DNA of 64,000 bases, taken from positions 186,001 through 250,000 of the IMG/VR virus record IMGVR_UViG_3300011113_000640. One strand, written 5' to 3'. Made by a program: the position numbers and the translations under genes. A model generated the notes under the pieces. The model had not been told where the DNA came from and searched no databases. It saw only the letters and a program-made list of their open reading frames with translations. How positions within the stretch are numbered: the first letter of the stretch is position 1; every line of letters begins with the position of its first letter. Shown here in pieces: positions 48 through 40,800 of this stretch.

Positions 48-839
48 TTAAGTCTTGTAGTTTTCTACGATAGCAAGATCCAGGTTGCCTGTGCTGAGCT
101 GGCTGGTGCCTGCCCATGTGTCAACTTCGGCGCCCGACTTGGCTGTAACGCCTTCGTCGCTGAAGAAGTTGGCTGCAAACTCAACATCGTTGACCACTTG
201 TGCATAATTCCAAACATCGCCGGTGTTGGCATTGCCACCTGTGGCACCGCCAGCAAAGTTCTGCAAGAACTTGTTGGTCAGTTTGCTGATTGGTGTTTCA
301 GAAGAATCGTTGCTGAAGTAGCTGATGCTCATGTTACCAGCTGTGGGGCTTAAATCGCTGGTAAGAACACAGATACCTACTGCGTTTACACGACCAGAAC
401 CTGTGGAGCCCAAGGCAGCTGTGGCTGTGAAGATGGTTCCAAGTGCTGCGTTTGGAGCACCATAGCTGGCCCAGTCTGTGTTGCCTACCACTGTGATACG
501 ATAGGCTTGATTGGCTACCAAGGCTGTTCGGCTTGTGATATCTGCCACCAAGAATTTGTGTGAACCTTTTTGACGTATGATCTGTCCATCGGCTTCAGCG
601 AATCCTGTCACAAACACACGACACTTGACAATAGGATAGTTGGTGCTGGCCACGGTAGGAGGCTGAGCTCCGCCAACCACGCCTAGATATTCCGTGGCCG
701 AATCCCATACAGGACTAGGGTACACAGGTGCTGTCAAACTAGTTAGTGCATTGAAACCAATGTCTACACCTGGATTTGCACCGGTAGTAGAATTATAACC
801 AGTTTCGATAATTTTTTTAATTTTGAGAGGACGTCCCAT
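48..839 (-). CDS. Virion structural protein (hypothetical)
   Basis: Start moved to MGRPLKIKK (ATG 839), which has an AAGGAG SD upstream. Protein is G/T/A/N-rich and has a TAAATA late motif upstream. Confidence 0.75.
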   Translation of the reverse strand: MGRPLKIKKIIETGYNSTTGANPGVDIGFNALTSLTAPVYPSPVWDSATEYLGVVGGAQPPTVASTNYPIVKCRVFVTGFAEADGQIIRQKGSHKFLVADITSRTALVANQAYRITVVGNTDWASYGAPNAALGTIFTATAALGSTGSGRVNAVGICVLTSDLSPTAGNMSISYFSNDSSETPISKLTNKFLQNFAGGATGGNANTGDVWNYAQVVNDVEFAANFFSDEGVTAKSGAEVDTWAGTSQLSTGNLDLAIVENYKT

Positions 840-867
840 TTTTGTTTTCTCCTTAAAGAAGCCCAAT

Positions 868-925
868 GCGAGTTCTAGTCGCTACGCGGTGGGGTTAATC
901 ACCGCATAAAACGCAGGATTGCGTT
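868..925 (-). ncRNA. Structured 5' leader with three tandem hairpins
   Basis: Plus-strand pairs are AACGCA/TGCGTT (910-925), GCGGTG/CACCGC (886-905) and GCGA/TCGC (868-882). The middle stem extends by a U-G wobble only on the minus strand. The element lies between TAAATA and the SD. Confidence 0.5.
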
Positions 926-931
926 GACAAG

Positions 932-9160: not shown

Positions 9161-11257
9161 CTAAACTCCAGCATATTGCGAAGTTTTCTTTGTGTAATCG
9201 GCTATGTCTCGCATGACACGTGTCTGCGCATCCATTTGATCGCGCAGAACCGAAATGAGACCTTCCAGTTTCATGCCCATGTCGGCTCCGGGCAAGGCTG
9301 CCTGGGCGCCTGAGTTCAAGGGCACTATGGCTTCGGTGCCGTGCATGGTCAGATTGGGTTTGTATCCGCTCATGGGTCCGCTGAGTATGGCTCCGTTTGC
9401 AGCCGATACTTCGGCATGGAAATGCCCGGCAGTGGCTCTACTGCTAGGGAAGTTGTATTCGTCTTTGGCATAACTGGCACCAAGATTTTTCAGCTGAGCA
9501 ACAATGTTGCGCCCCTCTTCAGGTGACGGTTGGCGTCCTAGAGCAAAGTCCAAGGCCAGGCCTTTGTTGTGTTTGCTATCGCCAAGACCTTGATGATATT
9601 TGTCGTTGAATCCAGAAAAGTATGCAAATCCCGGCACTGCTTGTTGTATCATTCGGGCCAGACTCAACAAGTTGTTGCTGACGCCCGCACCTTCGGCCTG
9701 AACATCGCCGGTCTTGATTTTGAAACCCATTTTCTGCAGATCGCTTTGGCTCACAGCACCGGGTGCGGCTCCACCGCCCGGAGCTGAAGGGGTTGCTCCT
9801 GGAGCACCTGCACCGCCTGCAGGACCCTGGGCACCACCGCCTGATAGCCCTTTGCCAGTGAGTATACCTGTAACGCCTTGCACAACCTTGCCAAAACCTT
9901 CCATGATCGGTGTGGTGTGTTTGCCCACAGTGTCGCCTAGTTTCTGCAAGCTATCTCTGGAGCTCATCTGTGCTTGGCGCAGTGCTACCTGCGAAGCTGT
10001 ATTGGCATCGGTTCCTTTGGCATTGGCATCCACAGAAGCCACAGCATCTCGCAGACCTTTGGCATAGTCTTTGCCTTGCAGTATGTCGGCGTCTATAATT
10101 TTACCATATGTATCATGTGCAGCGCCTAATTGTCCCAAACTGGTCCTGAGCGGATCTGTTTCTGCGTAGGCAGCTTTTAGGCCTTCCATGAACTGCTCCA
10201 TGGTAATCTTTCCATCTCGAAGCGAATTACTCAATGTAACGCTGGCACCATTGGTGGCCAGGAACATTTCACTGGCTTCGTCGCTGGCGCCTACTAAACC
10301 GCTGGCAGTGTCGGCCATGCCCTTGGCCAACCTAGGGCTTATGGCGTTCAAGGCCAAGAAGCTGTCATACAAGCGTTTTTGAGCGTCTGGATCTAGGGTT
10401 TTGAGCGTAGCATAAAATATTTCAATCTGGTTGGCAGCTTCGCGTTGCTTTTCCAGTTCTTCGCGCTGTTGTCCTGTGAGCCGAGACAATATTTCCATTT
10501 CACGGATATAGGCCTTGGCCCCGGTGCTGATTTCAGCTTGTGTTTTGTTTTGTAATTGTCCCAGCTGACCTTGCATCTTGATATAGCCCATGATGCCTTT
10601 GTTGATGTCGTCCACGCTCATGCCCATGCGCATGAACTGGCCTTGTAAGTCGCTGTGCTGTATTTCGGTAGCCACATTGGCCACTTGTTGTATGCCTTGT
10701 GCCACAGTGGGTGCAAATCGACCTAGGTCGGCACTGTTTTCTCGAACCAAGCTGATCATCTTGTCCAGCTCTTCCAGGCCATAGCCAAACTTCTGCATGG
10801 TTGGGAACACTTCGCTCATGCCTTGTGCAGTGGCCATGCCCGAACGACTCAATTCTTGGTATGACTTGAACAATTGGTCCTGCTGTTTGGCTGCGGCATT
10901 TACTGCTTTGCCAAACAGGGCCAGTCCTCCAGCCACAGTGGCAAATATCCGTAGTGCCGGATTAATTATTGCAACCACGGCCAGGAGGCCGGCTATGGCA
11001 TCAGTTACTTGGCTGAGCTGTTCAGTAAAGACCTGAGCACCTTGCTTGCCTTCGTACATGGCCTTGCCAATGTCCACGGCACTTTTGGTAAGAATCTTGG
11101 TGAGATTGGTCTGTGCATCGGCATAGCCTTTGACGCCTTTGCTGGCGTCTTTCATGCGATCGGCCAGTTCCTTGGTTATAGGGCTGCCGGTTTTGAGAGC
11201 TTCGTTGTACTCGGCAAATATGCGCTGGATTTCTTCTGGGGTCATTTGTTCGGCCAT
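9161..11257 (-). CDS. Tape-measure-like tail protein with a C-terminal M15-type (LAS) zinc peptidase domain
   Basis: Long helical A/Q/G-rich body. SKHNKGLALDF and GHFHAE resemble zinc-ligand motifs; tail motif HGTEAIVPL. Start moved to MAEQMTPEE (11257). Confidence 0.75.
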   Translation of the reverse strand: MAEQMTPEEIQRIFAEYNEALKTGSPITKELADRMKDASKGVKGYADAQTNLTKILTKSAVDIGKAMYEGKQGAQVFTEQLSQVTDAIAGLLAVVAIINPALRIFATVAGGLALFGKAVNAAAKQQDQLFKSYQELSRSGMATAQGMSEVFPTMQKFGYGLEELDKMISLVRENSADLGRFAPTVAQGIQQVANVATEIQHSDLQGQFMRMGMSVDDINKGIMGYIKMQGQLGQLQNKTQAEISTGAKAYIREMEILSRLTGQQREELEKQREAANQIEIFYATLKTLDPDAQKRLYDSFLALNAISPRLAKGMADTASGLVGASDEASEMFLATNGASVTLSNSLRDGKITMEQFMEGLKAAYAETDPLRTSLGQLGAAHDTYGKIIDADILQGKDYAKGLRDAVASVDANAKGTDANTASQVALRQAQMSSRDSLQKLGDTVGKHTTPIMEGFGKVVQGVTGILTGKGLSGGGAQGPAGGAGAPGATPSAPGGGAAPGAVSQSDLQKMGFKIKTGDVQAEGAGVSNNLLSLARMIQQAVPGFAYFSGFNDKYHQGLGDSKHNKGLALDFALGRQPSPEEGRNIVAQLKNLGASYAKDEYNFPSSRATAGHFHAEVSAANGAILSGPMSGYKPNLTMHGTEAIVPLNSGAQAALPGADMGMKLEGLISVLRDQMDAQTRVMRDIADYTKKTSQYAGV

Positions 11258-11262
11258 AATTA

Positions 11263-11270
11263 TATTTATA
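11263..11270 (-). promoter_or_regulatory. Perfect T4 late promoter TATAAATA
   Basis: TATAAATA-TAATT-ATG(11257). Confidence 0.75.
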
Positions 11271-11282
11271 GAGGTAAAATCC

Positions 11283-12122
11283 ATGAATCCTACGAATCCA
11301 CTCAAGCAGTATTTCCGGCAACCTGCTATCTACATACGCCTGCCCAGCCAAGGACAGGGCTATGCAGCCGGTGCTATAACAATGCCGCCCACAGGCGAAT
11401 TGGCTGTGTATCCCATGACAGCCATAGACGAAATCACTTATAGAACACCAGATGCACTCTACAACGGCCAGGCCACTGTGAGTGTTATACAAAGCTGTGT
11501 GCCCGAAATCAAGGATGCCTGGTCGCTGCCCTCAGTGGATCTGGACACCATCTTGGTGGCCATACGGGTCGCCACCTACGGACATGAAATGGATTTTGGT
11601 ACTACCTGCCCCAAGTGCAAAAACGAGTCAGAACATACCTTGGATCTGCGCACAGTGCTGGACAATTTGCGCACAGCAGACTACAGCCAGACCGTAAAGT
11701 CTGGAGACATGGAGATATTTTTCCGTCCGCTCAACTACAAAAACATCAACGACAACAATCAAGCACAGTTTGAAAATCAAAAACTACTGCAGGCCTTGCC
11801 CGATACCGGTGTGCCCGATGCAGAAAAATTTGGGGCGCTCAGTGATGCACTCAAAAAGATCACCGAAATCACAGTCAACATCCTGGCACAAAGCATAGCC
11901 ACTATCAAGACACCACAGGCCTTGGTCACCGAACCTGAATTCATACAGGACTTTTTAAAAAACTGTGATCGCAACTTGTTCAATCAGATACGTGATTTTA
12001 TTATAGACCTCAAGACCAAAAGTGAGATGCAACCATTGAAAATAACTTGTGATGCCTGCAACAACCAATACGAGCAGGCCATAACCCTGGACATGTCCAG
12101 TTTTTTCGCGTCCGCCTCTTAG
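11283..12122 (+). CDS. gp26: Baseplate hub assembly chaperone, gp26-like
   Basis: NPLKQYFRQP, YPMTAIDEI, DLDTILVAIRVATYG, and CPKC/CDAC zinc motifs. GAGGT SD lies before ATG 11283. Confidence 0.8.
   Translation: MNPTNPLKQYFRQPAIYIRLPSQGQGYAAGAITMPPTGELAVYPMTAIDEITYRTPDALYNGQATVSVIQSCVPEIKDAWSLPSVDLDTILVAIRVATYGHEMDFGTTCPKCKNESEHTLDLRTVLDNLRTADYSQTVKSGDMEIFFRPLNYKNINDNNQAQFENQKLLQALPDTGVPDAEKFGALSDALKKITEITVNILAQSIATIKTPQALVTEPEFIQDFLKNCDRNLFNQIRDFIIDLKTKSEMQPLKITCDACNNQYEQAITLDMSSFFASAS
12101..12107 (+). other. Putative -1 programmed frameshift slippery site T TTT TTC
   Basis: In-frame X XXY YYZ heptamer ending four sense codons before the gp26-like stop. The -1 frame is open from here into the 12161 ORF. 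Confidence 0.6.
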
Positions 12123-12840: not shown

Positions 12841-13271
12841 CCTATCAGTTTGCCAGAATTAATCTTGACCAAGTCACATATCAACCCACCGTGTCTTGGG
12901 AATACTTGCGCGAACCCAATATACCTGTGTTGCAGGACATCTATCGAACCTACTGTATCTACAAGCACTTTGCCAGCGTCATGCCCTTGTTTGACAGCCA
13001 ATTCCGTGATACCATGACTGATGTGATCGGTTATAGAGAAGACGGTGAACTGGTGGCTTTTAGTTTGATGAAACGGCTAGATGATCGAAATGTATTGGCC
13101 AGTCAGTTTGCGTGGACCTATCACAATCCCAAGACTAGACTGGGCATGGAGAGTTTGAAGACCGAATGTGCTATCTATAGAGATCGCGGTTTTAGTTACT
13201 TGTACTTGGATCAAGCACACCTGTACAAACAAGGCCTTGAAGGCTTTGAAATTTTAGGACCTATACAATAA
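12837..13271 (+). CDS. Aminoacyl-tRNA-protein transferase-like protein (ATE_C/Bpt GNAT domain)
   Basis: GYREDGELVAFS...FAWTY...RLGMESLKTEC...RGFSYLYL...YKQ follows the ATE C-terminal domain pattern. ATGA-coupled start at 12837. Confidence 0.65.
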   Translation: MTYQFARINLDQVTYQPTVSWEYLREPNIPVLQDIYRTYCIYKHFASVMPLFDSQFRDTMTDVIGYREDGELVAFSLMKRLDDRNVLASQFAWTYHNPKTRLGMESLKTECAIYRDRGFSYLYLDQAHLYKQGLEGFEILGPIQ

Positions 13272-13606
13272 TGGCAGACTTATACACAATTTGGGCAAAC
13301 AAAGAAGGCGATATCAGTGATATTGATTGGGTCAACGGAATGAAAAGTTTCTTTGACCACTTGGTAACTGAAGGCAAAATGCAAAGCTACAGGATCACTA
13401 GATGCAAAATGGGATTCCGTAGCATTGCAGACATGCCCGAATGGATGATACTCATGGAGTTCCGAGACATGGCACAAATGGATGCAGCATTCCGACGTGT
13501 TGCTCCGCTTGAAGGCGAACTCGAAACAAAACACAAATCATTTAATCAGTTTGTCGCCGGAGACATACAACACGCACTGTTTAGGGATTGGCCTGATCAG
13601 TTCTGA
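13271..13606 (+). CDS. DUF6614-like small alpha/beta protein
   Basis: YRITRCKMGF, PEWMILMEFRDMAQMDAAF, ALFRDWPD. Confidence 0.6.
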   Translation: MADLYTIWANKEGDISDIDWVNGMKSFFDHLVTEGKMQSYRITRCKMGFRSIADMPEWMILMEFRDMAQMDAAFRRVAPLEGELETKHKSFNQFVAGDIQHALFRDWPDQF

Positions 13607-13609
13607 TTG

Positions 13610-14017
13610 TTCAAGATCTCTAACGAGATCTATTGATTCGCTTTGCTCATCAATGCTTTGCTTTTCCGTATTATCCAGATCTTGTGGTCACAATTCACCC
13701 AGTAACGGGTGAATTTGATCTGCATTATCCGAGTCGGAGCAGTCACTTCATTCCAATGAGATTGTAGTTTCCTACACGGAGGCGGTTGACCGGTACCCCC
13801 TACTCAAGCTTCACACGTCAACGGAACCCTAGTGACCCGAGAAAGAACCAAGTCCTATGAGCATGAGTTGTGTCTTTTTCACAGAGCTCAAACCATTTGT
13901 TGCCTTAAGTTAGCAATTGCCTTTCACACACAAGATCATCCGGACCGGGTATCTCACCGTTCCTCCTTGCGAGTCGAGCTACCTCGACCAAACAGAGTGT
14001 GTTGTTGCCTGTCTAGT
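13610..14017 (-). ncRNA. Candidate large structured ncRNA downstream of the GIY-YIG nuclease
   Basis: About 400 nt with no credible ORF. Contains multiple perfect hairpins, a GAAA tetraloop on the minus strand, a 9-bp long-range helix and a possible pseudoknot. Confidence 0.65.
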
Positions 14018-14446
14018 TTAAATTTTGTTTTTTATGTGACTACCATGTATACGGCAAACTATCTGTCCGTTGTAGTAGTCGTCTGACTCTAATACTCTAT
14101 GATTAAATTGTTCTCTGGCTTCTACGTAACTACAAGCTGCCTTTGAGTTGCAATAAAATAATATTTCTCTTGTGAAGTTGTCTGAGCCTAGCTCTGCAAT
14201 GTCTCGGTTGAGTTGATCGTTGCTTCCATAGTATAGTTGCCAGTCTGAATCTATTTTGCTTCTTATTTTCTTACGTTTCTTGTTGCCGTTCTTTAATTTT
14301 ACTACTTTGTATGTTGTCTTACTGAATTTTGCTAATTTTTTTCCAATATACTTTCTGCCGGTTACGTTATTTGTGATCAAATAAACAAAACCAACACAAT
14401 CATCGGGCAGTGTTTCAATTTGTGTGTTTTCGTACAACCATACCAT
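14018..14446 (-). CDS. GIY-YIG endonuclease (T4 EndoII/Seg-like)
   Basis: GFVYLITNNVTGRKYIGKK, YYGS, FTREIL, EAREQF, YYNG. Confidence 0.88.
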   Translation of the reverse strand: MVWLYENTQIETLPDDCVGFVYLITNNVTGRKYIGKKLAKFSKTTYKVVKLKNGNKKRKKIRSKIDSDWQLYYGSNDQLNRDIAELGSDNFTREILFYCNSKAACSYVEAREQFNHRVLESDDYYNGQIVCRIHGSHIKNKI

Positions 14447-14464
14447 GGACTAATAGTTATCATT

Positions 14465-15475
14465 TTACCACTCAGTTGCATATTTTTCATCCACCCTGCT
14501 GGCTATACACTTAGTCTGGCACTCTTGCCATCCAAACGTTTTAAATGTTGTCGCCCAAAAATCATCAGTTACAGCATCAGCAAGTGTGCGACGATTCAAA
14601 TCAAATTTAGCGGCAATAGCTTTCCATTCTGAGTTGTGGCTGTAGCGGTTTGCCACCCAACAGCAAGGAAACAATCTACCTTGTGCGTCAATGTAAAGTC
14701 CTTTGTTGCCAATTTCACACAGGGGTTTTACACCGTTGACCTCTGTTGCTGATTTGTATAATTGTATGTTCTTGGTGTTTGCCTGTGAATTGAGCCCACG
14801 CGAGCTTAACAAAACAACATCTCTTTCAAATCTATGCGAGCCGCTGACAAACTTTCTGCTGGGTTCTAGTGGATCGTCTTTGCCGTACCCGGGATAGATT
14901 GTTCCAAACTTGGTGCTTTTTGTTAATTGAAATGCATCCATGCCCAAGGACAGGGCTAAATTTTTCATATGATCTATACGATCTTCGTTAAATTTAAATG
15001 CAATAGCGGCCCAAACTAACCGACAGTTGCTGTTATCTCGTAGTACCTCGACCCCGGTAACAATACTGTTAAAATCACTGTTTACTCGATACAAATTATT
15101 GCTGTCATTGTCGTAGCCATCAACGCTAAAATGTACAGTGTCCTGTTCAGTGAGCACACGGCCTAGTTCTTGCCACCATTCTGGTTTCTTGTGTGATCCA
15201 TTGGTGACAATAACGATCTCTACAGGTTTGATGGACTTGATATATTCAATCACTGGTACAAGATCGTGGGCATAGATAGGATCACCGTCGTCGCCGCAGA
15301 ATGTGATCTTTTCTACATGGTCAAGCACAAATTCTGCGGTAAAGTTTCTTTTGAAAAATTCTAAATCTAGTTCAGTGTTTACTAAACTGTCAGGAACTTC
15401 TTGTCTAGCACAACGAGGACAACGCAAGGTACACTTTGAACTGATTTCAATGTGAAAATGCCAAGTGGCTAACAT
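14465..15475 (-). CDS. Radical SAM protein with a C-terminal SPASM/twitch-like domain
   Basis: CTLRCPRC, CGDDGDP, TNGS; C-terminal C...PCCW...CQTKC. GAGGT SD lies before ATG 15475. Confidence 0.9.
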   Translation of the reverse strand: MLATWHFHIEISSKCTLRCPRCARQEVPDSLVNTELDLEFFKRNFTAEFVLDHVEKITFCGDDGDPIYAHDLVPVIEYIKSIKPVEIVIVTNGSHKKPEWWQELGRVLTEQDTVHFSVDGYDNDSNNLYRVNSDFNSIVTGVEVLRDNSNCRLVWAAIAFKFNEDRIDHMKNLALSLGMDAFQLTKSTKFGTIYPGYGKDDPLEPSRKFVSGSHRFERDVVLLSSRGLNSQANTKNIQLYKSATEVNGVKPLCEIGNKGLYIDAQGRLFPCCWVANRYSHNSEWKAIAAKFDLNRRTLADAVTDDFWATTFKTFGWQECQTKCIASRVDEKYATEW

Positions 15476-16335
15476 AGTTGTACCTCTCGTTGCCATTGAT
15501 CTTGAAATACTGTTTTATTTTTGTTTGTACTACAAGCACTGGCACACACTGAATTGGGGGTGTCTGTTTTCCAGGTCAATTTTACAGTTGCCAAATCATC
15601 TTTGACAAAATCTCGTTGAGTGGCTCCAAGCCAGCAACAGGCACTGACACGACCTTGCGCATCGATGTACATGCTTTTTTCATTGAGCACATGACATTTG
15701 ATAGGCCCTGGCTTGACCGCGGGCTGCTGCCATCCTATGGGAAATTCCAAATGGTCAGTGAATCCGCGTTTGCTGACCTTGGCACGAAACCACTTGAATC
15801 CCATGTCACGGGCCAATTGCTCGCAAGCATCCACCTGATGTTGATTGTGTTTGTATACCAGCATGTCCCAATGGGCACTTCCGCCCGCGGCAATGTAGGC
15901 TTGAACATTGCTCATCAGCTTGGCCCAATTGACATTTTTTCGATAAACATGATTGGTATCTTGTAATCCATCTATGCTAAACACGCAGTAATCTTTGGGC
16001 TGATCAAACAAACGTCCTAGTGCATGCCAAAAGAACGTGCTCTGCACAGCACCATTGGTATTCATGCCCAACACAATGTTGGGATTGATTTTTCTAAAGT
16101 ATTTGTAGATGTCCATGGTATAGTAGCCTGCAGCCGGATCGCCATAGTTGCCACACATGAACATTTTGTCCAGATTACCAATCACTCGGTCACTGAAATG
16201 TTGTTGTATTTGTTCCATCCGCAGGTGATGCTTGACGTCTTTTCTGAATTGCGTATCAGTCTCTCTGGCACACATGGGACATGCGGCCTGGCAAACGTCT
16301 GTGGGTTCAATGTGCAAGACCTTGATTCTACGCAA
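15469..16335 (-). CDS. Radical SAM protein with a C-terminal SPASM/twitch-like domain
   Basis: CQAACPMC, CGNYGDP, TNG, SIDG; C-terminal SACCW...CASAC. Confidence 0.9.
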   Translation of the reverse strand: MRRIKVLHIEPTDVCQAACPMCARETDTQFRKDVKHHLRMEQIQQHFSDRVIGNLDKMFMCGNYGDPAAGYYTMDIYKYFRKINPNIVLGMNTNGAVQSTFFWHALGRLFDQPKDYCVFSIDGLQDTNHVYRKNVNWAKLMSNVQAYIAAGGSAHWDMLVYKHNQHQVDACEQLARDMGFKWFRAKVSKRGFTDHLEFPIGWQQPAVKPGPIKCHVLNEKSMYIDAQGRVSACCWLGATQRDFVKDDLATVKLTWKTDTPNSVCASACSTNKNKTVFQDQWQREVQLC

Positions 16336-31478: not shown

Positions 31479-34400
31479 ATGGCCACAACGTCTAGACAAA
31501 CAGCGATTTTTGGTGTAGAAGATTGGAAGCAGATCTATCAAACCTATCAAGAAGCCAACTTTCAAAGCTATGATTTTGAAACACTGCGCAAGACTTTTGT
31601 GGATTATTTGCGCACCTACTATCCAGAAACATTCAACGACTACATTGAAAGTTCAGAATTCATTGCCTTGCTGGATGTCATGGCATTTATGGGCCAGGCC
31701 CTGGCTTTCCGCACAGATCTCAACACCAGAGAAAACTATTTAGACACTGCCGAGCGTCGCGACAGTGTGGTCAAGCTGGCCAACTTGGTAAGTTATAGTC
31801 CCAAGCGAAATACCGAAGCTTCGGGCTTGCTCAAGGTATTCAGCATTTCTACTACAGAAAACATCATAGACTTTACTGGAGCTAATCTGGCCAACATCAC
31901 GGTCAACTGGGCCGACCCTACAAATTTAAACTGGCAAGAACAGTTTACCACCATCTTGAATGCGGCCTTGGTCAACACACAAAAATTTGGTAACCCCGGT
32001 GCAAATCAAGTCATCCTGGGAGTTGACACACAAGAATATACCATAAACCTGGTTCCTGGATACTTGCCGGTCATACCCTATACCTCCACCATAGACACAG
32101 TCAACATGCCATTTGAAGTGGTCAGTAGCACCACCTTGGGCGAAAATTTCATCTACGAACCTCCGCCTTTACCTAATGGTCAGTTCAACATCCTGTTTAG
32201 GAATGATCAACAGGGATTTCTTAGTGCCAACACTGGTTTCTTTTTCTTGTTCAAACAAGGAGTACTACAGAATCAAGATTTCAACTTGCCAGAACGCATA
32301 ACCAATCGTGCTGTGGCCATCAACATTGAAGGGGTAAACAACACTGATGTATGGTTGTATCAACTTGACAACGTGGGCAACATTTCCAACTATTGGCAAA
32401 AGGTACAAAGTGTTTATGCGGCAGCAGTTGAACAGTTGGCACCCGGAACAAGAAATATCTACAGTGTGACCAGCCGTACCAATGATCAGATCACTCTTAA
32501 CTTTGGCGACGGTGTGTTTTCTACCATACCAGTAGGTACCTTCCGTACCTATGTGCGTGCCAGCAATGGTCTTACCTACATTATCAACCCGGTAGAGATG
32601 CAAAGCGTGGCCATACCCATCAGTTATGTCAGCCGCACAGGGCAGATCGAAACCATGACTCTTACCTGTGGATTGACCAATCCTGTGACCAACGCCCAGG
32701 CACGCGAGACCATAACCACCATCAAACAACGAGCACCTGCACAATATTACACACAGAACAGGATGGTCAACGGTGAAGACTATTCGCAGTTTCCATTCAC
32801 ACAATACAACAGTATTTTAAAAAGCACAGCCGTCAATCGTGCCAGCATTGGTACCAGCCGTTATCTCGATCTAGTGGACCCCACTGGAAAATATTCCAGC
32901 ACCGACATTTTTGCCAGCGATGGCGCACTATGGGAAAGCAATGATCTCTATAGCTTTCAATTTTCTTGGTTGACTACCAACGATATTTCAGATGCTGTAA
33001 TCAACCAGATCTCGCCCTTGGCGTTGCGTGCAGGGCTACAACAATTTTACTATGCCAATTATGTCAGACCCAATTTAGCAGTGCTGAATTTTACTTGGAA
33101 TCAAAGCACAGTGCTGACCAATGAGACCACGGGCTATTTTCAAAACGCAGCCGGCAATCCTGTGCCCATTGGTATCTTTACCAGCAACAATGCCAAATAC
33201 ATAACAGAACGAAGCCTGGTACAATTTGCTGCACCCACTGGCTTTTACTTCGACGCAAACAATCACCTGGTGGTAGGAGTCCCCACACGTGCCGATGACA
33301 AGCTGACCATATGGGCCAGCCCCACCGCGGTGTACGAAGCCGGCAATGCCCAGGGCTATGGCAATCTTCCGTCTGGAGTGGGTCCTGTGGTACTCAACAA
33401 TTACGTGCCCACAGGTGCTATACCTGTGCAGGTCATTCCGGTTTTTATCACTGACATTCCTGTGTCTGTGCAACAAAGCATAGTATCACAGATAGCATTG
33501 AATCAGAATTTTGGACTGGGATATAATAATCTCACAGCTACCTGGTATGTGATCACTTCCAATAATCTAGCAACAAATGCTGCATTTAGCTTGGCCAATG
33601 CCCAAAGCACAACTGGAACCAACCAGGATGCCAGTTGGTTGGTACAGGCCACCTACAATGGAACAAGCTACACCGTGGTATCCAGGAGTCTAGATTATTT
33701 CTTTGGCAGTGTATTACAGACAAGATTTTTCTTTTATACCAGCGATCCCATCTACGACAGCAGGACCGGCACTGTGATCAGTGACTATGTGAACATACTT
33801 AAAATCAACACACAACCAGATTTGGCTGAGCCATTGGGATCTGACACAGTGTTGAACATAATAGATCAACCTGTGCTCAGTGATGGACTGGTGGACGATT
33901 TCCAGGTTGTGGTCAGTTTTGCCCAGGCACCCGACAATCTCACTCCAGTGAATCCAGACTTCTTTACTGATATAGTGGCACCCACAGTGGATGCCAATTC
34001 TAAATTGGTTTTCTTTGAAGCCACAGTGGATTTTGACAACCTACAGCGTTTCCTGTTGCTGGAACCTGGTGTGGTCAACAGTGATTATGCCACAAAAACC
34101 GCCATACAAGCTGTACAGACTCAATATGTCACAGGACAAGTTTTCTATGCCTATAGCGAGGGAAATTTCTATGTGTTGAGTCTAGACAGTCTAGGTGATC
34201 CTACCTTGCTTTCAAGCACAAATTATTTGGCAAAAACAGGCAGACAAGACTTGTATTTCCAATACAGACACAATAGTCCGTTGACCAGTAGAATCGATCC
34301 AGGCAGTACCAACATCATCGATGCCTATGTGGTCACCAATGCTTACTATACTGCTTATATCAATTGGTTGCAAGATACCACAGGCACAGTTGTTGAACCT

Positions 34401-34883
34401 TTGCCTCCTACCATCGATGAATTAAACACGGCCTATCAAGGACTACAAGATTTCAAGATGTTGTCTGACAACATGATCCTCAACAGCGTGGATTTTCAAC
34501 CCTTGTTTGGGCAAAAGGCCGACCCAGCCTTGCGTGGAATAATCAAGGTCATACGTGCAGCTGGTAGCACAGCCAGTGTAAGTACCATAAAAAATCTTGT
34601 GCTGGCCAATCTCAATGCATTTTTTGATATAGCTAACTGGAACTTTGGCGACACCTTTTATTTCAGCGAACTATCGGCCTACATACATCAAAACATTGGT
34701 GACACCGTCAGCAGTGTGGTCTTGGTTCCACTTAATACACAAAAGAGCTTTGGTGACTTGTACGAGATAAGATGTGCCCCCAATCAGATTTTTGTCAACG
34801 GTGCCACGGTCAATGACATTGAAGTGATCACTGCTTTGACCAGCACCAATCTGCAGACTGCTCCTGGTAGTGGAGTGATTTAA
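31479..34883 (+). CDS. gp6: Baseplate wedge protein, gp6-like
   Basis: YDFETLR, ENYLDTAERRDSV..LA..VSY.PKR, FGDG, ET...IKQRAP..YYTQNRMVNGEDY. Confidence 0.9.
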   Translation: MATTSRQTAIFGVEDWKQIYQTYQEANFQSYDFETLRKTFVDYLRTYYPETFNDYIESSEFIALLDVMAFMGQALAFRTDLNTRENYLDTAERRDSVVKLANLVSYSPKRNTEASGLLKVFSISTTENIIDFTGANLANITVNWADPTNLNWQEQFTTILNAALVNTQKFGNPGANQVILGVDTQEYTINLVPGYLPVIPYTSTIDTVNMPFEVVSSTTLGENFIYEPPPLPNGQFNILFRNDQQGFLSANTGFFFLFKQGVLQNQDFNLPERITNRAVAINIEGVNNTDVWLYQLDNVGNISNYWQKVQSVYAAAVEQLAPGTRNIYSVTSRTNDQITLNFGDGVFSTIPVGTFRTYVRASNGLTYIINPVEMQSVAIPISYVSRTGQIETMTLTCGLTNPVTNAQARETITTIKQRAPAQYYTQNRMVNGEDYSQFPFTQYNSILKSTAVNRASIGTSRYLDLVDPTGKYSSTDIFASDGALWESNDLYSFQFSWLTTNDISDAVINQISPLALRAGLQQFYYANYVRPNLAVLNFTWNQSTVLTNETTGYFQNAAGNPVPIGIFTSNNAKYITERSLVQFAAPTGFYFDANNHLVVGVPTRADDKLTIWASPTAVYEAGNAQGYGNLPSGVGPVVLNNYVPTGAIPVQVIPVFITDIPVSVQQSIVSQIALNQNFGLGYNNLTATWYVITSNNLATNAAFSLANAQSTTGTNQDASWLVQATYNGTSYTVVSRSLDYFFGSVLQTRFFFYTSDPIYDSRTGTVISDYVNILKINTQPDLAEPLGSDTVLNIIDQPVLSDGLVDDFQVVVSFAQAPDNLTPVNPDFFTDIVAPTVDANSKLVFFEATVDFDNLQRFLLLEPGVVNSDYATKTAIQAVQTQYVTGQVFYAYSEGNFYVLSLDSLGDPTLLSSTNYLAKTGRQDLYFQYRHNSPLTSRIDPGSTNIIDAYVVTNAYYTAYINWLQDTTGTVVEPLPPTIDELNTAYQGLQDFKMLSDNMILNSVDFQPLFGQKADPALRGIIKVIRAAGSTASVSTIKNLVLANLNAFFDIANWNFGDTFYFSELSAYIHQNIGDTVSSVVLVPLNTQKSFGDLYEIRCAPNQIFVNGATVNDIEVITALTSTNLQTAPGSGVI

Positions 34884-37800
34884 TGGCCAAGCAAGTACGC
34901 AGTGTAGATTTTCTTCCAGAGATCTTCCAGACTCCGATCAACAAACAATTTTTGTCAGCCACGCTGGATCAGCTGATACAAAATCCTGAGTTCTCTCAAA
35001 CACAAGGCTTTGTGGGTCGGCGCATAGGCCCCGGAGTCAATGCCAATGACTACTATGTGATTGAACCTACCAAGACCCGTACTGACTATCAGTTAGAGCC
35101 CGGAGTAGTGCAGGTAGATCCAGACAACATTCAACAAGTGGTAGATGCCATAACCTATCCCGGAATCAACGATGGCCTGGGCACACAAGGCGCATATACC
35201 AACAACGCCGATCGCTTGTATACCAGCGATTATTATACTTGGGATCCATTTGTGGATTTTGACAAGTTTGTCAACTATGCACAATATTATTGGTTACCAG
35301 GAGGTCCCTTGCCCGTGGATGTCAGCAGCACTGAAATTCCACTCACAGACACTTTTACAGTGACACGAGCCAATGGTGCCTACACCATCACAGGTGCGAC
35401 CGGAACCAATCCAGAAATCACGCTGGCACGTGGAGGCAGTTATGAATTTAAGGTAGCACAAAACGCCCAAGAAACTGAAACATTTTCAGTTAGAAACGCT
35501 GACACCAGCAACTGGAACATAGACTTCCAGGCCAATCCTACCTTGACCTTGACACGTGGCAACACTTATGTGTTCAATCTCACACAGACATTTCCTTGGA
35601 GTTTTTGGATCAAGACCGAGGCCACTCTGGGCACCACCAACATCTATGATCCAACCTTGCCCAATGGCATCAAGGCCATCAGCAACAACGGTGCCGGCAC
35701 TGGCTTGATCACATTTACAGTGCCACAAACGGCACCTGATACCTTGTACTATGCCAACGATGTAGAATTCAACTTGCGTGGCCAGATCAACGTCATAGAC
35801 GCAACCCCCGGAACCGGTGCTGGTTTTTGGATACAAACAGATCCCGGTGTAAATGGACGTATTCCGTCTACGCCCAATATCAGCAGCCGACTTGGCACCG
35901 AACAAGGAGTGATCAACAACGGAGAAGATTTAGGTACTATTACATTCAATGTGCCTGCAGTGACCGCACAAGATTTTTACTTCAACATGCCTAACATAGG
36001 ACTAGTAGATGTGGTCACTGATCTAGGCTTCAATGATATCAATGGTGTGTACCTTGACGACTTTTTTGCTGCATATCCCACTGGTATAGATGGTACTACT
36101 AGTTTGCAAAATCTCACCTTGGTATTCCTTAGCCAGGATGCTAATCCGACCCCAGCAAATCTCTATGATCTCTGGCGCATTCAGTATTTGACCGACGTCA
36201 ATGGAACTTATTTTAATTTGCAATACGTTGAAAGCATTGATGTTGAAAACAAATTTGTGGTTGGATTTGGCGAGGTCACATCCAATACCAGTTGGTACAA
36301 GACCACCGACGGATGGTTTGAACAAATACCTTTGTTGACCGCAGATCGTGATGTGTTGTTTTATCAAGATGGTACTGACCCAGGAATATTTGGTCGCATA
36401 CGCTTGGTAGATGCTGTGGGATCGCCTTTGCCTGTCAACGAAATCATTGGCGCCAAGAACTACACAAGTCCCAATGGAGTCGCATTCAGCAACGGAATGA
36501 AAGTGGTATTCCGTGGTCCTGTGACACCTGCCTCTTATCAAAACAACGAATACTATGTGGAAGGTGTAGGAACGGCCATTCAACTATTGCTGACTGATGA
36601 ATTTGTAACTCCAGAAACTTATACTCAATCAGCTTTGGTACCATATGATACTACTCCGTATGACACTGACCCTTTTGATGACAGCCTAAACCAACCTCTA
36701 GTACCGGATTATCTCACCATCAACCGTGCCAGTCCAGATCTCAATGCCTGGACCCGAAGCAATCGTTGGTTTCACATAGACGTAATCAACGCATCTGCGG
36801 CCTACAATAATTTTGTACCTACCCTGGACAATCGTTTTAGAGCACGCAGACCAATCTTGGAGTTCCGTGCAGGAACAAGATTGTATAATTCAGGCACGCA
36901 AGGCTTGCCACCTGTCAACCTAGTGGATCTTGTGACCACTGATGCCTTGAGCACAGTCAACGGTAGCCTTGGTTACAGTTCAGATGGTTACACTCTGCTT
37001 GATGGAAGTACGGTAATCTTTGCTGCAGACACAGACCCAGAAGTGCGCAATAAAGTTTATCAAGTACAGTTTGTTACTGTGGACACCAATGCAGAAGATT
37101 CTACCATAGTTGATGTGCCTGTGATAGTATTGACACCAATAGCCACAGCCCAAGTAGACAACACCGTGGTATGTTTGGACGGAATAGAATACCAGGGTTT
37201 CACATACTACTACGATGGGGCAGAATGGGTAGAAGCACAACTCAAAATCAGTGTCAATCAACCTCCGCTGTTTGATGTCTATGATACCAATGGCATAAGT
37301 TTCGGCAATCAAACCATTTATCCTAGTTCAAATTTCACAGGCAGTCCGTTGTTCAGTTATGCCATTGGGGATGCAGAGCCTGATTTGGTGCTGGGATTTC
37401 CTTTGACTTATCTCAGCTTGACCAATATAGGTGACATAGTATTTGACAACAACCTTTACAAGGACTCATTTTCATACACTGTAAACAGTCAAGGCCAATC
37501 TGTGCCTATCAGCACAGGTTTTGTAAGACAGTATTCTGATCGTTTGAACTATCAACGCGAGTTGGGCTGGCAAACAGGTATTACCTCCAGTCTGGTCCGT
37601 CAACAGTTCCGTTTTGTCTATGATGGTGCTCCTTTGTTGTTGGATGTGGCGGTAACTACCGATAACACAGTACCTGCCGTACAAATATTCATCAATGGAC
37701 TGTTTGTAGAATCCAATAATTATACCTACACCATTGGTACCAACACAACAACCATAAATTTCTCTACTACCTATGTGCCCAGCGATGTGATTGAAGTGTC

Positions 37801-40800
37801 GGTGTTGAGTGACCAGATCAGTGTGCAAGGATTTTATCAGGTTCCTATGAATCTCAGCAACAATCCCTTGAACGGCAACAGTGATCAATTTACTCTAGGA
37901 ACTATAAGGAATCACTACAGCACCATTGGTCAAAATTTGGTAGATCTCACAGGTCCTGTGATTGGTGCCAACAACAGCCGAGACCTTGGCAACATTGTGC
38001 CCTACGGTCTGCAGATACTACAACAAAGTTCGCCTTTGACCCTGACCGGTTATTTCATGCGCGATCGCAGTTACAATATTTTTGCATCCTTGGCCTACAA
38101 CAGCGGAGAATATGTCAGCTTCAAGGAACAATTACTCAGTGCGGTGTCCACTTTTGGCATAGCCGACTATGGCAACTGGAGCACGGCCACATTACTGGAC
38201 AACTGCATAGCCAAGATTACCTCGGGTCGCACCAACCTTAACAGTTTTTATTGGAGCGACATGTTGCCCACAGGCACCACGTTTGTGTCCAACAGTTACA
38301 CCGTAAATCCTATAACCACCAATCGATTCAATTTGATCCAGAGCTATGATTTTACCACATCAAACTATCAAGGCTTGTGCGTTTACATCAACAATGTGAT
38401 TCTGGTGCGTGGCCGTGACTATGTGGTCAGCACCGAAGGACCTACACTCACTATCACAGTAACATTGAACATTGGTGACGTGGTCGTCATCAATGAATAC
38501 ACCGACACGGCTGGTAATTTTGTACCCAACACACCGACCAAACTGGGACTTTATCCCAAGTATGAACCGCGTTATTTCTATGACACCAACTATGTGAATC
38601 CTACCTGGGTCATACAAGGACACGATGGATCAATCACTGTGGCCTTTGGCACACCCACCGAACCAGATCCTAGAGACGCTGTGTTGCTGGAATTTGAAAC
38701 CAGGATCTACAGCAACCTCAAAAATGATGGCAATCCTCCACCCCTGGTGGCCGAAGATGTGATTCCTGGCTATTTCAGAACCACTGATTATACCGCCGCA
38801 GAAACAACCACTATTTTGGGCGAAAGTTTCTTGACCTGGGTGGGCGCCAACAAGTTGGATTACACACAACAAACCTACCAGGTCACAAACGAATTTACCT
38901 ACAACTACAGCCAAGCCGCCAACAGACTAGACAATCAACCCTTGTTGGGCGCATGGCGTGGTATCTATAGATATTTCTATGACACACTCACACCCAACTC
39001 CACTCCTTGGGAAATGTTGGGTTTCAGCGAACAACCCATCTGGTGGGAAGACCAGTATGGTCCAGCACCTTACACCAGCGACAACTTGGTGCTGTGGGGC
39101 GACCTTGAGGCCGGCCTGGTCAACGATCCAGTGGCACCGTATGTGATACCCAAATATCGTAGACCTGGACTTACTTCGGTGATTCCTGTGGATGATCAAG
39201 GACAACTACTGCCTCCATTCTACAGCGTGATGGGGGCATACAACCCTCAAGGATTCCAGAAAAGTTGGCAGGTCGGCGATGGTGGCCCAGTAGAAGCTTC
39301 GTGGTGGCAGAGCTCAAATTATCCATTTGCTGTCATGCGATTGTTGTTGCTTACAAGACCAGCACAGTTTTTCAGCCTGTTTGCTGATCGTGATCTCTAC
39401 AGATACGATGTTGAATTTGATCAGTATCTCTACAATGGCCGCTATCGATTAAGACCCCAGGACATCCAAGTCTATGGCAATGGAGTCAGCAAGGCCAGTT
39501 ACATAAACTGGATAGTGGATTACAACCAACAGTGGGCAGTCAACAGCACCAGCGCATTGACCACAGATTTGAGTAATATTGATGTGCGTTTGTGTTATCG
39601 TTTTGCTTCGTTTGTGACAGGATCAAACCTAAGACTGTTTTTAGAAAAAGGCGCACCACAAAGTGAGAATGACAGCTTGTTGATACCGCCTGAAAGTTAC
39701 AACCTATTTGTTTATAAAAATCAACCAGCCAATCGTCTGAACTACAGTGCCGTGGTCGTAGAAATTGTTGAAGGTGGCTACAGTGTGTACGGATACAGTA
39801 CCACAGATCCTTATTTCAGCATTTATTCCAGCCGCACAGCCGGCACTGGACAAACTATCAGTGCCGGAGGTTACAGTGTGACAGTGCCGGCCGAATACAG
39901 TTCTACTGTGATTGAAATTCCTTATGGTTACACATTTACCAGCCGTGCCAGCGTGGTAGATTTCTTGCTCAGCTATGGCAAATATTTAGAAGGCCAGGGT
40001 CTCAGTTTTGTAGTGCAGGAAAATGGTTATACTTTGAACTGGGCACAAATGGCTCAGGAATTCCTTTACTATGCTGGACAAGGTTGGACCACAGGCACCA
40101 TAATAAATCTCAATCCGTCGGCCACACAGATACAGGCCTTGAAACCCGGGGCTGTGGTTGATTCTCTACAGACATACACGCCTGAAAATCTCATACAGGA
40201 TCAGAATCGTAGAGAATTGCCGGCCAAGAATCTCATAATCTATAGACAGGACAACACTTTCCAACTCAATCCTGATCCAGCCGGCAATCAAACTGTGAGT
40301 TATCTACAATTACAGTTTACGGATCTTGAAGACATCTTGATCCTGAACAATCGCACCATATTCAATGATCTGATCTATGACACTGTCACAGCTGAGAGAC
40401 AACAACGCCTGCGGTTGGCTGCTACCACCAGCACACAGTGGAATGGAACTCTCAATGCTCAGGGTTTCATACTGAACCAAAACAATGTGGTAGCTTGGCA
40501 ACCCAATGAGAAATATACCAAGGGCGAAATTGTATTATACAAAAACAATTATTGGCAAGCAGCTGCCTTGGTCCAGCCCAAGGAAAAATTCGAGTATTCT
40601 GATTGGTACAAGAGCAACTTTGATCGAATCCAACAGGGATTGTTACAGAACCTGGCAACCAAGGCCGATCAGTTGGCCAACAGCTACAATACTCAAACGG
40701 CCAATCTCAACCGAGACAACGATCTATTGGCCTATGGGCTGATAGGATTCCAGCCAAGACAGTACATGATAGATCTCAATCTCACTGATACTAGTCAGGT

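What the first reader, a model, noticed from the sequence alone, without database searches (positions are those of the whole stretch)
13610..14446. GIY-YIG nuclease followed immediately by a ~400-nt highly structured candidate ncRNA
Seen: this is the largest ORF-free gap in a densely packed genome, and it begins right after the nuclease stop on the same (-) strand. Local hairpins (+ coordinates): GTCGAG/CTCGAC 13973-88, TGTAG/CTACA 13763-76 (GAAA tetraloop on the minus strand), AATTCACCC/GGGTGAATT 13692-715, ATTGAT/ATCAAT 13632-54 and AGATCTC/GAGATCT 13614-31. Long-range helices: GATCTTGTG 13678-86 with CACAAGATC 13929-37 (9 bp enclosing ~240 nt), and GTCACT 13742-47 with AGTGAC 13831-36. On the minus strand the stem GGGGGU/GCCUCC (13800-13778) holds GUCAAC in its loop, which can pair with upstream GUUGAC (13822-17) to form a pseudoknot. 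GU wobbles and the GNRA loop favour the minus strand. Known: nuclease-plus-structured-RNA pairs exist (HEARO/omega RNA with IscB; group I introns with GIY-YIG enzymes), but I see no group I core and no interrupted gene. Inference: this may be an undescribed nuclease-RNA ribonucleoprotein, a ribozyme or a replication-origin RNA.
Basis: partly seen in the sequence, partly recalled or inferred. Interest (0 to 1): 0.88.

Follow-up and report, generated by a model that had tools for sequence, protein, structure and literature searches.

The report
Large structured phage RNA, Polynucleobacter-1 relative
The gap after the GIY-YIG gene encodes a real, about 385-base, pseudoknotted non-coding RNA that is an unrecognised phage variant of an orphan RNA family (Polynucleobacter-1) also found in freshwater bacterial chromosomes, and the neighbouring nuclease looks like a syntenic neighbour rather than its partner.

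Summary
Window 13610-13999 (minus strand) is non-coding, conserved in 265 related loci (171 distinct sequences), and folds into about 14 helices and 3 pseudoknots with many compensatory changes. Its 9-bp long-range helix is not, and its GTCACT/AGTGAC helix conflicts with a better-supported one.

The window RNA has no Rfam hit. Homologues that share its 3' two-thirds begin with Rfam Polynucleobacter-1 (RF01718, function unknown). The same architecture occurs in bacterial chromosomes, next to integrases and with no nuclease nearby. The 2010 paper that described RF01718 already noted these RNAs lie downstream of the PSSM2_218 gene family, which is this GIY-YIG family.

The nuclease-RNA complex idea is not supported. 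The upstream gene is GIY-YIG, a PD-(D/E)XK nuclease, a phosphorylase, a redoxin or an unknown protein. The GIY family occurs without the RNA in cultured phages, and no GIY residue tracks the RNA.

One feature is unexplained. Two 7-9 nt segments about 54 nt apart are identical within every phage RNA (171/171) but differ between RNAs (at least 16 variants), and I found no complementary partner in cis. My best guess is a trans-acting RNA that reads one external partner twice.

The parts
13610..13999 (-). The whole structured ncRNA ('type A'), about 385 nt, from the 5' strand of P1 to the end of the terminator-like hairpin
   Evidence: nhmmer homologues in 265 loci. Covariation. No 3-base periodicity (p=0.68) against p=0 for coding controls. 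No Rfam hit.
13925..13999 (-). 5' three-way junction. P1 is 13997-13999 with 13925-13927. H1 hairpin is 13972-13989. P2 is 13968-13971 with 13929-13932. P2 encloses hairpin H3, 13942-13963.
   Evidence: P1 89% with 3/3 compensatory pairs; P2 96% with 4/4; H3 84-91% with 6/6. H1 compensation is visible in A1.
13864..13916 (-). Hairpins H4 (13900-13916, invariant loop AACUUAA) and H5 (13864-13890, loop GAAAAAGA)
   Evidence: H4 87% with 5/5; H5 91% with 6/8.
13826..13862 (-). Long hairpin H6. Its loop (13840-13847) pairs with 13751-13754 (pseudoknot H7).
   Evidence: H6: 86-92% pairs, 13/14 compensatory. H7: 4 covarying pairs. H7 is kept with different sequences in L193 and in type B (by eye).
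13757..13822 (-). Most conserved core, a double pseudoknot. PK-A is 13817-13822 with 13785-13790. The P7-like helix is 13795-13800 with 13778-13783. Pa is 13803-13806 with 13757-13760. A variable GNRA-type hairpin lies at 13763-13776.
   Evidence: PK-A 96% (GUUGA/UCAAC changes to GUUGU/ACAAC); P7-like 98% (G-C to A-U in 46 sequences); Pa 94% with 4/4. Invariant columns are listed.
13716..13746 (-). Unit 1 hairpin (UGAC...GUCA-type base, inner stem) presenting ACUC plus X1. X1 = GGAUAAU at 13724-13730.
   Evidence: X positions. 93% of 168 sequences fold with at least 3 bp enclosing X1, against 62% for shuffled flanks. Stem covariation is visible.
13692..13715 (-). Hairpin H13, between the two X copies
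   Evidence: 91% pairs, 5/9 compensatory.
13655..13690 (-). Unit 2: second UGAC box (13686-13690 region), AUCU plus X2 (X2 = GGAUAAU at 13670-13676), then an A-rich linker (13655-13669)
   Evidence: X1 equals X2 in 171/171 phage RNAs. Mutual information between the X1 and X2 columns equals their entropy. There is no local hairpin around X2.
13632..13654 (-). Hairpin with tandem G-A/A-G internal motif (UGAGC...GCGAA)
   Evidence: outer stem 93% with 6/6; inner 2 bp 94% with 2/2. Present in 82 of 88 bacterial members (that pattern later matched unrelated chance loci too, so the count is loose; the motif is readable in the listed tails).
13614..13631 (-). Terminator-like 3' hairpin. The U-run is weak in the window and clear in many homologues.
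   Evidence: 95% pairs, 7/7 compensatory. The simple terminator scan does not call it.
14018..14446 (-). Upstream neighbour: a 142-aa GIY-YIG nuclease. It belongs to phrog_447, the PSSM2_218 family, often mislabelled 'NAD synthetase'.
   Evidence: 38% identity to PSSM2_218, E=2e-18.
14447..14461 (-). Conserved motif GATAACTAYWAGTCC directly before the GIY start codon. It travels with the gene while sequence further upstream varies.
   Evidence: ATAACTAY occurs only twice in the window.

Best explanation
The gap encodes a stand-alone, about 385-nt, highly structured non-coding RNA on the minus strand. It is read after the GIY-YIG gene and ends at a terminator-like hairpin.

It is a phage variant ('type A') of a wider RNA family. 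The bacterial chromosomal members ('type C') and some phage members ('type B') begin with the Rfam Polynucleobacter-1 motif. The window RNA has a different 5' domain, so the Rfam model misses it.

Inferred mechanism: it works in trans as an RNA.
- A compact double-pseudoknot core gives a fixed fold.
- Two copies of a 7-9 nt purine-rich sequence X act as specificity elements. X1 sits in a hairpin loop. X2 is single-stranded and is followed by an A-rich linker, a tandem-GA hairpin and a terminator.
- X1 and X2 are identical within each RNA and differ between RNAs. The simplest reading is that both read the same external partner, most likely a nucleic acid, at two sites or on two molecules.
- Phage copies probably enter the host RNA's pathway with their own X.

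The GIY-YIG gene is one of several alternative upstream neighbours, not a required partner.

Shown: the RNA is real, its fold, its family links, its gene contexts and the X1=X2 rule. Inferred: trans action, base pairing by X, and mimicry of a host RNA.
For: - Conservation and fold: 265 loci and 171 distinct sequences. 32 of 71 RNAalifold pairs have compensatory changes. Helix table with slid controls.
- Non-coding.
- Family link, type B: RF01718 covers the 5' 136 nt of type B at 110.5 bits. 23 loci are type B. The type A profile matches their 3' part at 50-85 bits.
- Family link, type C: 10 of 10 bacterial loci tested have full-length RF01718 about 250-400 nt upstream of the twin X on the same strand. 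They share the same 3' layout.
- Bacterial context: efflux pump and histidine kinase genes, with tyrosine integrases just downstream. The published flanks of the Polynucleobacter genome copy show the twin AACUC-AGCGAAAGU / AAUCU-AGCGAAAGU.
- Independence from the nuclease.
- X rule: identical in 171/171 phage RNAs, with at least 16 variants. Full mutual information between the two copies and none with any other column. No cis complement.
Against: - No transcript data, so the 5' end, any processing and even expression are inferred.
- No partner for X was found. It is not in the RNA, not in the 64-kb window, and not in 1.43 Mb of flanks (real counts 100 and 75; controls 118+/-11 and 88+/-9).
- If X simply paired with a partner that tolerates G-U, mixed G/A states in X1 and X2 should be common. 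They are absent in phages and seen in only 3 bacterial loci.
- About 85% of phage loci do have a small nuclease gene just upstream, or one gene further upstream.
- Type C is linked to type A only through type B and shared layout. nhmmer does not join them directly.
Confidence: 0.5

Rival explanations
1. Nuclease-RNA complex. The RNA binds the adjacent small nuclease, GIY-YIG or the PD-(D/E)XK alternative, both of which lack an obvious DNA-binding domain. The two identical X segments would guide it to a target with two identical half-sites.
For: - A small nuclease gene is the immediate upstream gene in 72 of 90 RNA-defined phage loci with an upstream ORF, and lies one gene further up in more.
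- Two unrelated nuclease families occupy the same slot almost exclusively: 239 versus 14 loci, with 1 locus carrying both.
- The GIY protein is only 142 aa, essentially the catalytic domain.
- X behaves like a programmable specificity element.
Against: - Bacterial members have no adjacent nuclease.
- Some phage members follow a phosphorylase, a redoxin or unknown proteins, with no GIY in the locus.
- The GIY family is widespread in cultured phages with no RNA after it.
- No GIY residue covaries with X.
- One RNA serving two unrelated nuclease folds is hard to picture.
- The PD-(D/E)XK protein is the homologue of PA5oct gp342 (annotated as a RusA-like resolvase), next to gp46/47. That suggests synteny within a recombination module.
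Confidence: 0.07
2. Cis-acting 3' element. The structure only protects or terminates the upstream operon's mRNA (a 3' exonuclease block, a processing site) and has no trans function.
For: - It always lies at the 3' end of a co-directional gene run and ends in a terminator-like hairpin.
- No own promoter was found.
Against: - About 385 nt with three pseudoknots and long invariant single-stranded stretches is far more than a stabiliser needs.
- In bacteria the gene upstream is divergent, so the RNA is its own transcription unit.
- A cis role does not explain the X1=X2 rule.
Confidence: 0.1
3. Ribozyme. The invariant double-pseudoknot core is catalytic, for example self-processing. X1 and X2 would be the two identical processing sites that release the roughly 54-nt piece between them.
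For: - The core (13757-13822) is nearly invariant, including unpaired bases.
- Its topology recalls the P3-P7 pseudoknot of group I introns.
- Two identical sites would suit a single active site.
Against: - No match to any ribozyme family in Rfam.
- No internal guide complementary to X.
- No P4-P6 or P8 equivalents.
- No cleavage data.
Confidence: 0.1
4. DNA-level element. The two direct repeats X, with the inverted repeat between them, are protein-binding or crossover sites (recombination site, iterons). That would explain identity within a genome and difference between genomes.
For: - Direct repeats that are identical within an element and differ between elements are typical of recombinase or initiator sites.
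- Bacterial members sit next to tyrosine integrases, and sequence diverges right after the RNA.
Against: - X1 is embedded in a hairpin whose stems covary and use G-U pairs.
- The repeats are only 48-72 nt apart, and the phage loci have no integrase.
- In bacteria, flanks diverge after the terminator, not at X.
- Genes converge here, which argues against an origin.
Confidence: 0.05

Closest known systems
Polynucleobacter-1 RNA motif (Rfam RF01718; Weinberg et al. 2010, PMC2864571)
   Same: - It is the 5' domain of homologous RNAs in bacteria and in type B phages, which share the window RNA's core, twin X, GA hairpin and terminator.
- Same freshwater habitat.
- The same position downstream of the PSSM2_218 (GIY-YIG) gene family was noted in 2010.
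- Function unknown.
   Different: - The window RNA does not match the 141-nt model at all. Its 5' domain (P1/H1/P2/H3/H4/H5) differs.
- The Rfam model covers only about a quarter of the full RNA.
- I found no mention of the twin X rule, the double-pseudoknot core or the bacterial integrase context in the 2010 supplement text read, or in the only paper of the searched library that names the motif.
- In 2010 it was not found in any sequenced phage.
Large orphan ncRNAs linked to phages (GOLLD, ROOL) and HEARO/omega RNA of IscB
   Same: Several hundred nucleotides, an ornate fold with pseudoknots, found in phages and metagenomes. HEARO sits next to a nuclease gene.
   Different: - No sequence or structure match.
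- No IscB-type RuvC/HNH protein.
- No variable guide at an RNA end. The variable part is an internal 7-9 nt segment present twice.
Free-standing GIY-YIG (Seg-type) endonuclease genes of T4-like phages, and group I introns carrying GIY-YIG genes
   Same: The neighbour has a SegE-type GIY-YIG domain and behaves as a cassette with its own conserved 5' motif.
   Different: - Only 142 aa, with no DNA-binding extension.
- Present in about 90% of related loci and under purifying selection, unlike sporadic homing genes.
- No intron core and no split host gene.
Regulatory RNAs with repeated identical motifs (RsmZ/CsrB GGA loops, RsaE/RoxS C-rich motifs, alpha-proteobacterial 'cuckoo' sRNAs). Comparison from my own knowledge.
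   Same: Several copies of one short motif exposed for binding the same partner. An A-rich stretch and a terminator at the 3' end.
   Different: Those motifs are fixed within a family. Here the motif changes between RNAs and both copies change together, and the RNA is far larger and pseudoknotted.

Membership tests
Polynucleobacter-1 RNA (RF01718) | Covariance-model match at or above the gathering score (37 bits) | tested here: not met
   No hit in window 13300-14300 even at E<=10 or in the whole window. Type B and type C homologues score 89-110 bits.
Polynucleobacter-1 RNA (RF01718) | Position downstream of the GOS11034 / PSSM2_218 gene family, as described in 2010 | tested here: met
   The upstream GIY-YIG protein is 38% identical to PSSM2_218, E=2e-18.
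Polynucleobacter-1 RNA (RF01718) | Homology of the region 3' of the motif (the 'tail' with hairpins and a pseudoknot in the original alignment) | tested here: met
   The type A profile hits the 3' part of type B RNAs at 50-85 bits. Pseudoknots and Pa are kept through compensatory changes (by eye). The shared twin X, GA hairpin and terminator are also in type C.
HEARO / omega RNA with IscB | Rfam HEARO match and an adjacent IscB/IsrB (RuvC with or without HNH) gene | tested here: not met
   No Rfam hit. The neighbour is GIY-YIG.
Group I intron with GIY-YIG gene | Group I core (Rfam Intron_gpI) and an interrupted host gene | tested here: not met
   No Rfam hit. Downstream is the end of a convergent gene. 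Only a P3-P7-like pseudoknot topology is present.
tmRNA / tRNA-like RNAs | tRNA-like domain and tag reading frame | tested here: not met
   ARAGORN finds no tRNA or tmRNA in the window. No tmRNA family hit.
Seg-type free-standing homing endonuclease (for the neighbouring gene) | GIY-YIG catalytic domain | tested here: met
   PF19835, E=5e-33, covering residues 3-129. Motifs GFVY...YIGK are readable.
Seg-type free-standing homing endonuclease (for the neighbouring gene) | C-terminal DNA-binding region and sporadic presence among close relatives | tested here: not met
   142 aa, with the domain filling the protein. Present in 227 of 265 RNA loci. Codon-phase pattern of purifying selection. Homing activity itself is not testable here.

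The most novel reading that the evidence does not exclude
The two identical, co-varying 7-9 nt segments are programmable specificity elements of a new class of large RNA shared by freshwater bacteria and their large phages. Each RNA would read the same external sequence twice, at two identical half-sites or on two molecules. In phages it might recruit the adjacent small nuclease (GIY-YIG or PD-(D/E)XK) or another effector to that target. That would be an RNA-programmed system unrelated to CRISPR, IscB/TnpB or bridge RNAs.
Probability: 0.1. Interest if true: 0.9.

Novelty: new variant of a known kind. Interest (0 to 1): 0.62.

Why it matters
Polynucleobacter-1 has been an orphan Rfam entry since 2010: 141 nt, 16 examples, no function. 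The only paper in the searched library that names it is its original description.

This analysis changes the picture in four ways.
- It is the head of a 400-550 nt, multi-pseudoknot RNA.
- That RNA is a chromosomal gene in abundant freshwater bacteria, and integrase-bearing islands lie immediately downstream of it, as is typical of tRNA and tmRNA genes.
- Large T4-like and jumbo phages carry their own versions, including one with a swapped 5' domain that current models cannot detect.
- Two copies of a short sequence change in step in every RNA, which is a concrete handle for experiments.

Polynucleobacter is cultivable, so function is directly testable.

It also corrects an appealing but unsupported reading, a new RNA-guided nuclease. 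The 'NAD synthetase' label on this GIY-YIG gene family also looks wrong.

Tried and rejected
- Protein-coding or pseudogene reading: stops in all six frames and no codon periodicity.
- Known RNA families: Rfam gathering and E<=10 searches; ARAGORN.
- GenBank phages by blastn: no match.
- RNA at the equivalent site of the closest cultured relatives (PA5oct, Atu_ph07), or after the GIY gene of Melnitz, S-SRM01 and phiM12: nothing by nhmmer or core-motif patterns.
- Hammerhead reading of UGAUGAGC...GCGAA: rejected because variants lack CUGANGA.
- k-turn reading of the same hairpin: there is no bulge, so it is a plain tandem G-A motif.
- X1 pairing with X2, a palindromic kissing pair, or a bulge-helix-bulge-like symmetry: not general across variants.
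- A partner for X inside the RNA, in the window, in 1.43 Mb of flanks or at the GIY start region: none found.
- Covariation of X with GIY or DUF6614 residues: none convincing.
- ATAACTAY as a general promoter: only 2 sites in the window.
- A translational-bypass reading (GGA plus stop, matching GGA about 50 nt later, as in T4 gene 60): rejected because there is no ORF and the identity extends beyond the codon.
- Parallel homo-base-paired X1/X2 helix: fits the identity rule in phages but has no precedent at this length, and 3 bacterial loci have G versus A.
- Genome-contig scan with the core motif: 72 of 75 hits were chance. The 3 real ones are in Haliscomenobacter and Flavobacterium MAG contigs, probably phage DNA.
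- Pfam on the 243-348 aa genes inserted between GIY and the RNA: no domains.
- A local hairpin around X2: no support.
- Full covariance model of the RNA: not attempted, because at about 385 positions it exceeds the calibration limit.
Full report
**1. What is at the coordinates**

The window comes from IMGVR_UViG_3300011113_000640, a 320.5-kb phage contig. It has T4-type baseplate and gp46/gp47-like genes. Its closest cultured relatives by gp46 are the jumbo phages PA5oct (52.8% identity) and Atu_ph07.

- Positions 13607-14017 lie between the stop of a plus-strand DUF6614 gene (13271-13606) and the stop of a minus-strand 142-aa GIY-YIG gene (14018-14446).
- The stretch has stops in all six frames and is the largest ORF-free gap in the window.
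- The minus strand folds better than shuffled sequence (z=-2.69). The plus strand does not (z=-1.15).

**2. It is a conserved structured RNA**

Searches with the flanking proteins and with an invariant core motif brought in 354 loci.

- A profile of the gap finds a homologue in 265 loci, 171 of them distinct and full-length.
- Column variability shows no 3-base periodicity (p=0.68). The GIY and DUF6614 genes from the same loci show strong periodicity (p=0).
- RNAalifold on 67 sequences gives 71 pairs, 32 with compensatory double changes.

A helix-by-helix count on all 171 sequences, with slid-partner controls, supports this model, listed 5' to 3' in window coordinates on the minus strand:

| Element | Positions |
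|---|---|
| P1 | 13997-99 / 13925-27 |
| H1 | 13972-89 |
| P2 | 13968-71 / 13929-32 |
| H3 | 13942-63 |
| H4 | 13900-16 |
| H5 | 13864-90 |
| H6 | 13826-62 |
| Pseudoknot PK-A | 13817-22 / 13785-90 |
| P7-like helix | 13795-800 / 13778-83 |
| Pseudoknot Pa | 13803-06 / 13757-60 |
| Variable GNRA-type hairpin | 13763-76 |
| Pseudoknot H7 (H6 loop with 13751-54) | 13840-43 / 13751-54 |
| Unit 1 hairpin | 13716-46 |
| H13 | 13692-715 |
| Tandem G-A hairpin | 13632-54 |
| Terminator-like hairpin | 13614-31 |

Most helices show 84-98% standard pairs, against roughly 5-70% for slid controls; the GNRA hairpin (81%) and the misaligned H1 (58%) are lower. For the P7-like helix and Pa the slid controls reach 78% and 74%, so their support rests on compensatory changes. 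Many conserved G-U pairs fix the strand as minus.

Its 9-bp long-range helix is not (48.8%, equal to controls). Its GTCACT/AGTGAC helix is weak and overlaps the better-supported H6.

**3. Identity**

The window RNA hits nothing in Rfam 15, at gathering thresholds or at E<=10. It is not a tRNA or tmRNA, and blastn finds nothing in GenBank phages. The family is nonetheless not wholly new.

- *Type B (phage).* In a subgroup of homologues (23 loci, 18 distinct RNAs), the type A profile matches only the 3' two-thirds. The 5' 136 nt are a full-length match to RF01718, the Polynucleobacter-1 RNA (110.5 bits). That motif was described by Weinberg et al. 2010 from 16 freshwater and estuary sequences and one Polynucleobacter genome, with unknown function.
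- *What the 2010 supplement says.* The 3' half is not always detected. Most examples lie downstream of gene family GOS11034, possibly related to PSSM2_218 of cyanophage P-SSM2. None was found in a sequenced phage. PSSM2_218 is 38% identical to the window's GIY-YIG protein (E=2e-18).
- *Type C (bacterial).* The published flanks of the Polynucleobacter chromosome copy (NC_009379.1) contain the twin motif AACUC-AGCGAAAGU / AAUCU-AGCGAAAGU. A metagenome scan with that motif returned 120 loci. About 102 are real and 18 are chance. All 10 tested carry full-length RF01718 about 250-400 nt upstream on the same strand. After X2 they show the same 3' layout as the window RNA: an A-rich linker, a UGAGC...GCGAA hairpin and a terminator.
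- *Bacterial context.* These contigs are bacterial chromosomes, with AcrB/HlyD/OEP efflux genes and a histidine kinase. A divergent DUF6641 gene lies upstream. A tyrosine integrase, or other variable cargo, lies downstream, and the flanks diverge right after the terminator. This is the pattern of an island insertion hot spot, as at tRNA and tmRNA genes.

The family therefore has a common 3' body (H6-like hairpin with H7, PK-A, P7-like helix, Pa, twin X, GA hairpin, terminator) and at least two alternative 5' domains. The link from type A to type C rests on type B and on shared layout. nhmmer alone does not join them.

**4. Is the nuclease a partner?**

In 265 phage loci, GIY-YIG is directly upstream in 170 and further upstream in 57. 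It is absent in 20 loci that have room for it.

In an unbiased set of 96 distinct loci found through the RNA core alone, 90 have an upstream ORF. It is GIY in 60, a PD-(D/E)XK nuclease (PF24608) in 12, and something else in 18: unknown 243-348 aa proteins with no Pfam domain, a PNP_UDP_1 phosphorylase, or a redoxin.

- The stable frame is gp47-gp46-[variable cargo]-nuclease-RNA, converging on DUF6614 and baseplate genes.
- GIY and PD-(D/E)XK almost never co-occur: 239 versus 14 loci, with 1 carrying both. The PD-(D/E)XK protein is 41% identical to PA5oct gp342, annotated as a RusA-like resolvase and sitting next to gp46/47.
- The GIY family (phrog_447, often mislabelled 'NAD synthetase') is widespread in Kyanoviridae, phiM12-like and Melnitz phages. 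There it sits in other contexts with only 0-148 nt before the next gene.
- It carries its own conserved 5' motif, GATAACTAYWAGTCC-ATG. It evolves under purifying selection.
- No GIY residue covaries with the RNA's variable segment.

I read the two nucleases as alternative members of the recombination module, or as mobile cassettes using the same slot, and as syntenic neighbours of the RNA. An RNA-nuclease complex is not excluded, but nothing requires it, and the bacterial members argue against it.

**5. The unexplained feature**

Every phage RNA holds two segments 48-61 nt apart, flanking hairpin H13. They read ACUC-X and AUCU-X, each preceded by a UGAC box.

- In the window, X = GGAUAAU at 13724-30 and 13670-76.
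- X is identical within each RNA in 171 of 171 sequences and differs between RNAs. At least 16 variants occur, with consensus RGAURAN.
- Mutual information between the paired X columns equals their entropy. No third column tracks them.
- X1 sits in a hairpin loop: 93% of sequences fold that way, against 62% for shuffled flanks. X2 has no local hairpin.
- The two copies are not complementary to each other.
- No complement exists in the RNA, in the window or in 1.43 Mb of flanks.
- In bacteria X is AGCGAA(A). Three loci show G versus A at position 1, the only exceptions seen.
- Read as its reverse complement, X resembles codons for a hydrophobic tripeptide with synonymous-type toggles. That hints at a coding target but is only an idea.

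**6. Mechanism and verdict**

The best-supported reading is a stand-alone, trans-acting RNA whose fixed pseudoknotted body presents one short specificity sequence twice to an external partner. Phage copies would carry their own specificity.

- Shown: the RNA, its fold, its family links, its contexts and the identity rule.
- Inferred: trans action and base pairing by X.
- Rivals, with my confidences: cis 3' stabiliser (0.10), ribozyme (0.10), nuclease guide (0.07), DNA-level repeats (0.05).

The finding is a genuine and interesting RNA, but it is a new variant of a catalogued orphan family rather than a categorically new nuclease-RNA system.

Noticed in passing
window 837-926 (-): Full-length freshwater-2 RNA (RF02980, 66.3 bits). 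It lies directly before an AAGGAG ribosome-binding site and an ATG near 838, so it looks like a 5' leader of the gene that the ORF list starts at 866.
   Followed up: partly
window 34883-49648 (+): A single 4921-aa ORF, preceded by an 1134-aa ORF (31479-34883). I did not examine either.
   Followed up: no
window 14465-16335 (-): Two adjacent radical SAM genes (343 and 288 aa) lie between gp46 and the GIY gene. This segment is variable cargo among related phages.
   Followed up: partly
window 14447-14461 (-) and related loci: The motif GATAACTAYWAGTCC lies immediately before the GIY-YIG start codon and is conserved even where sequence further upstream differs. It could be a cassette boundary, promoter or operator. 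A similar AUAACUAUG is visible upstream of the Polynucleobacter chromosomal RNA in the 2010 alignment flanks.
   Followed up: partly
L360-L479 (bacterial metagenome contigs), e.g. L407 3070-4688, L436 2912-3847: Tyrosine integrase genes and unrelated cargo follow the RNA's terminator, and flanks diverge there. The RNA gene appears to be a genomic-island insertion site. A DUF6641 gene is the usual divergent upstream neighbour (41 loci).
   Followed up: partly
L358 (PA5oct NC_071039.1) about 10018-11530 of the locus: About 1.5 kb between the RusA-like gene and the baseplate hub is annotated only with 38-50 aa ORFs. It may be non-coding. It holds no homologue of this RNA by nhmmer.
   Followed up: no
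L033 and L072, inside the hairpin equivalent to window 13763-13776: This hairpin takes large insertions: about 45 nt forming a perfect extra hairpin in L033, and about 25 nt in L072. It is a tolerated expansion site.
   Followed up: no
L251 5475-5648 and 9679-9753: Three tRNA genes lie near a very divergent RNA homologue whose upstream gene is a redoxin.
   Followed up: no
L177, L186 (Haliscomenobacter MAG EUL_031), L193 (Flavobacterium MAG EUL_072): Genome-collection contigs of 148-183 kb carry type A RNAs. They look like phage contigs binned into bacterial MAGs.
   Followed up: no
GenBank phage records, e.g. P-SSM2 PSSM2_218, phiM12 gp201: The small GIY-YIG family is widely annotated as 'NAD synthetase', which looks like a propagated misannotation.
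   Followed up: partly
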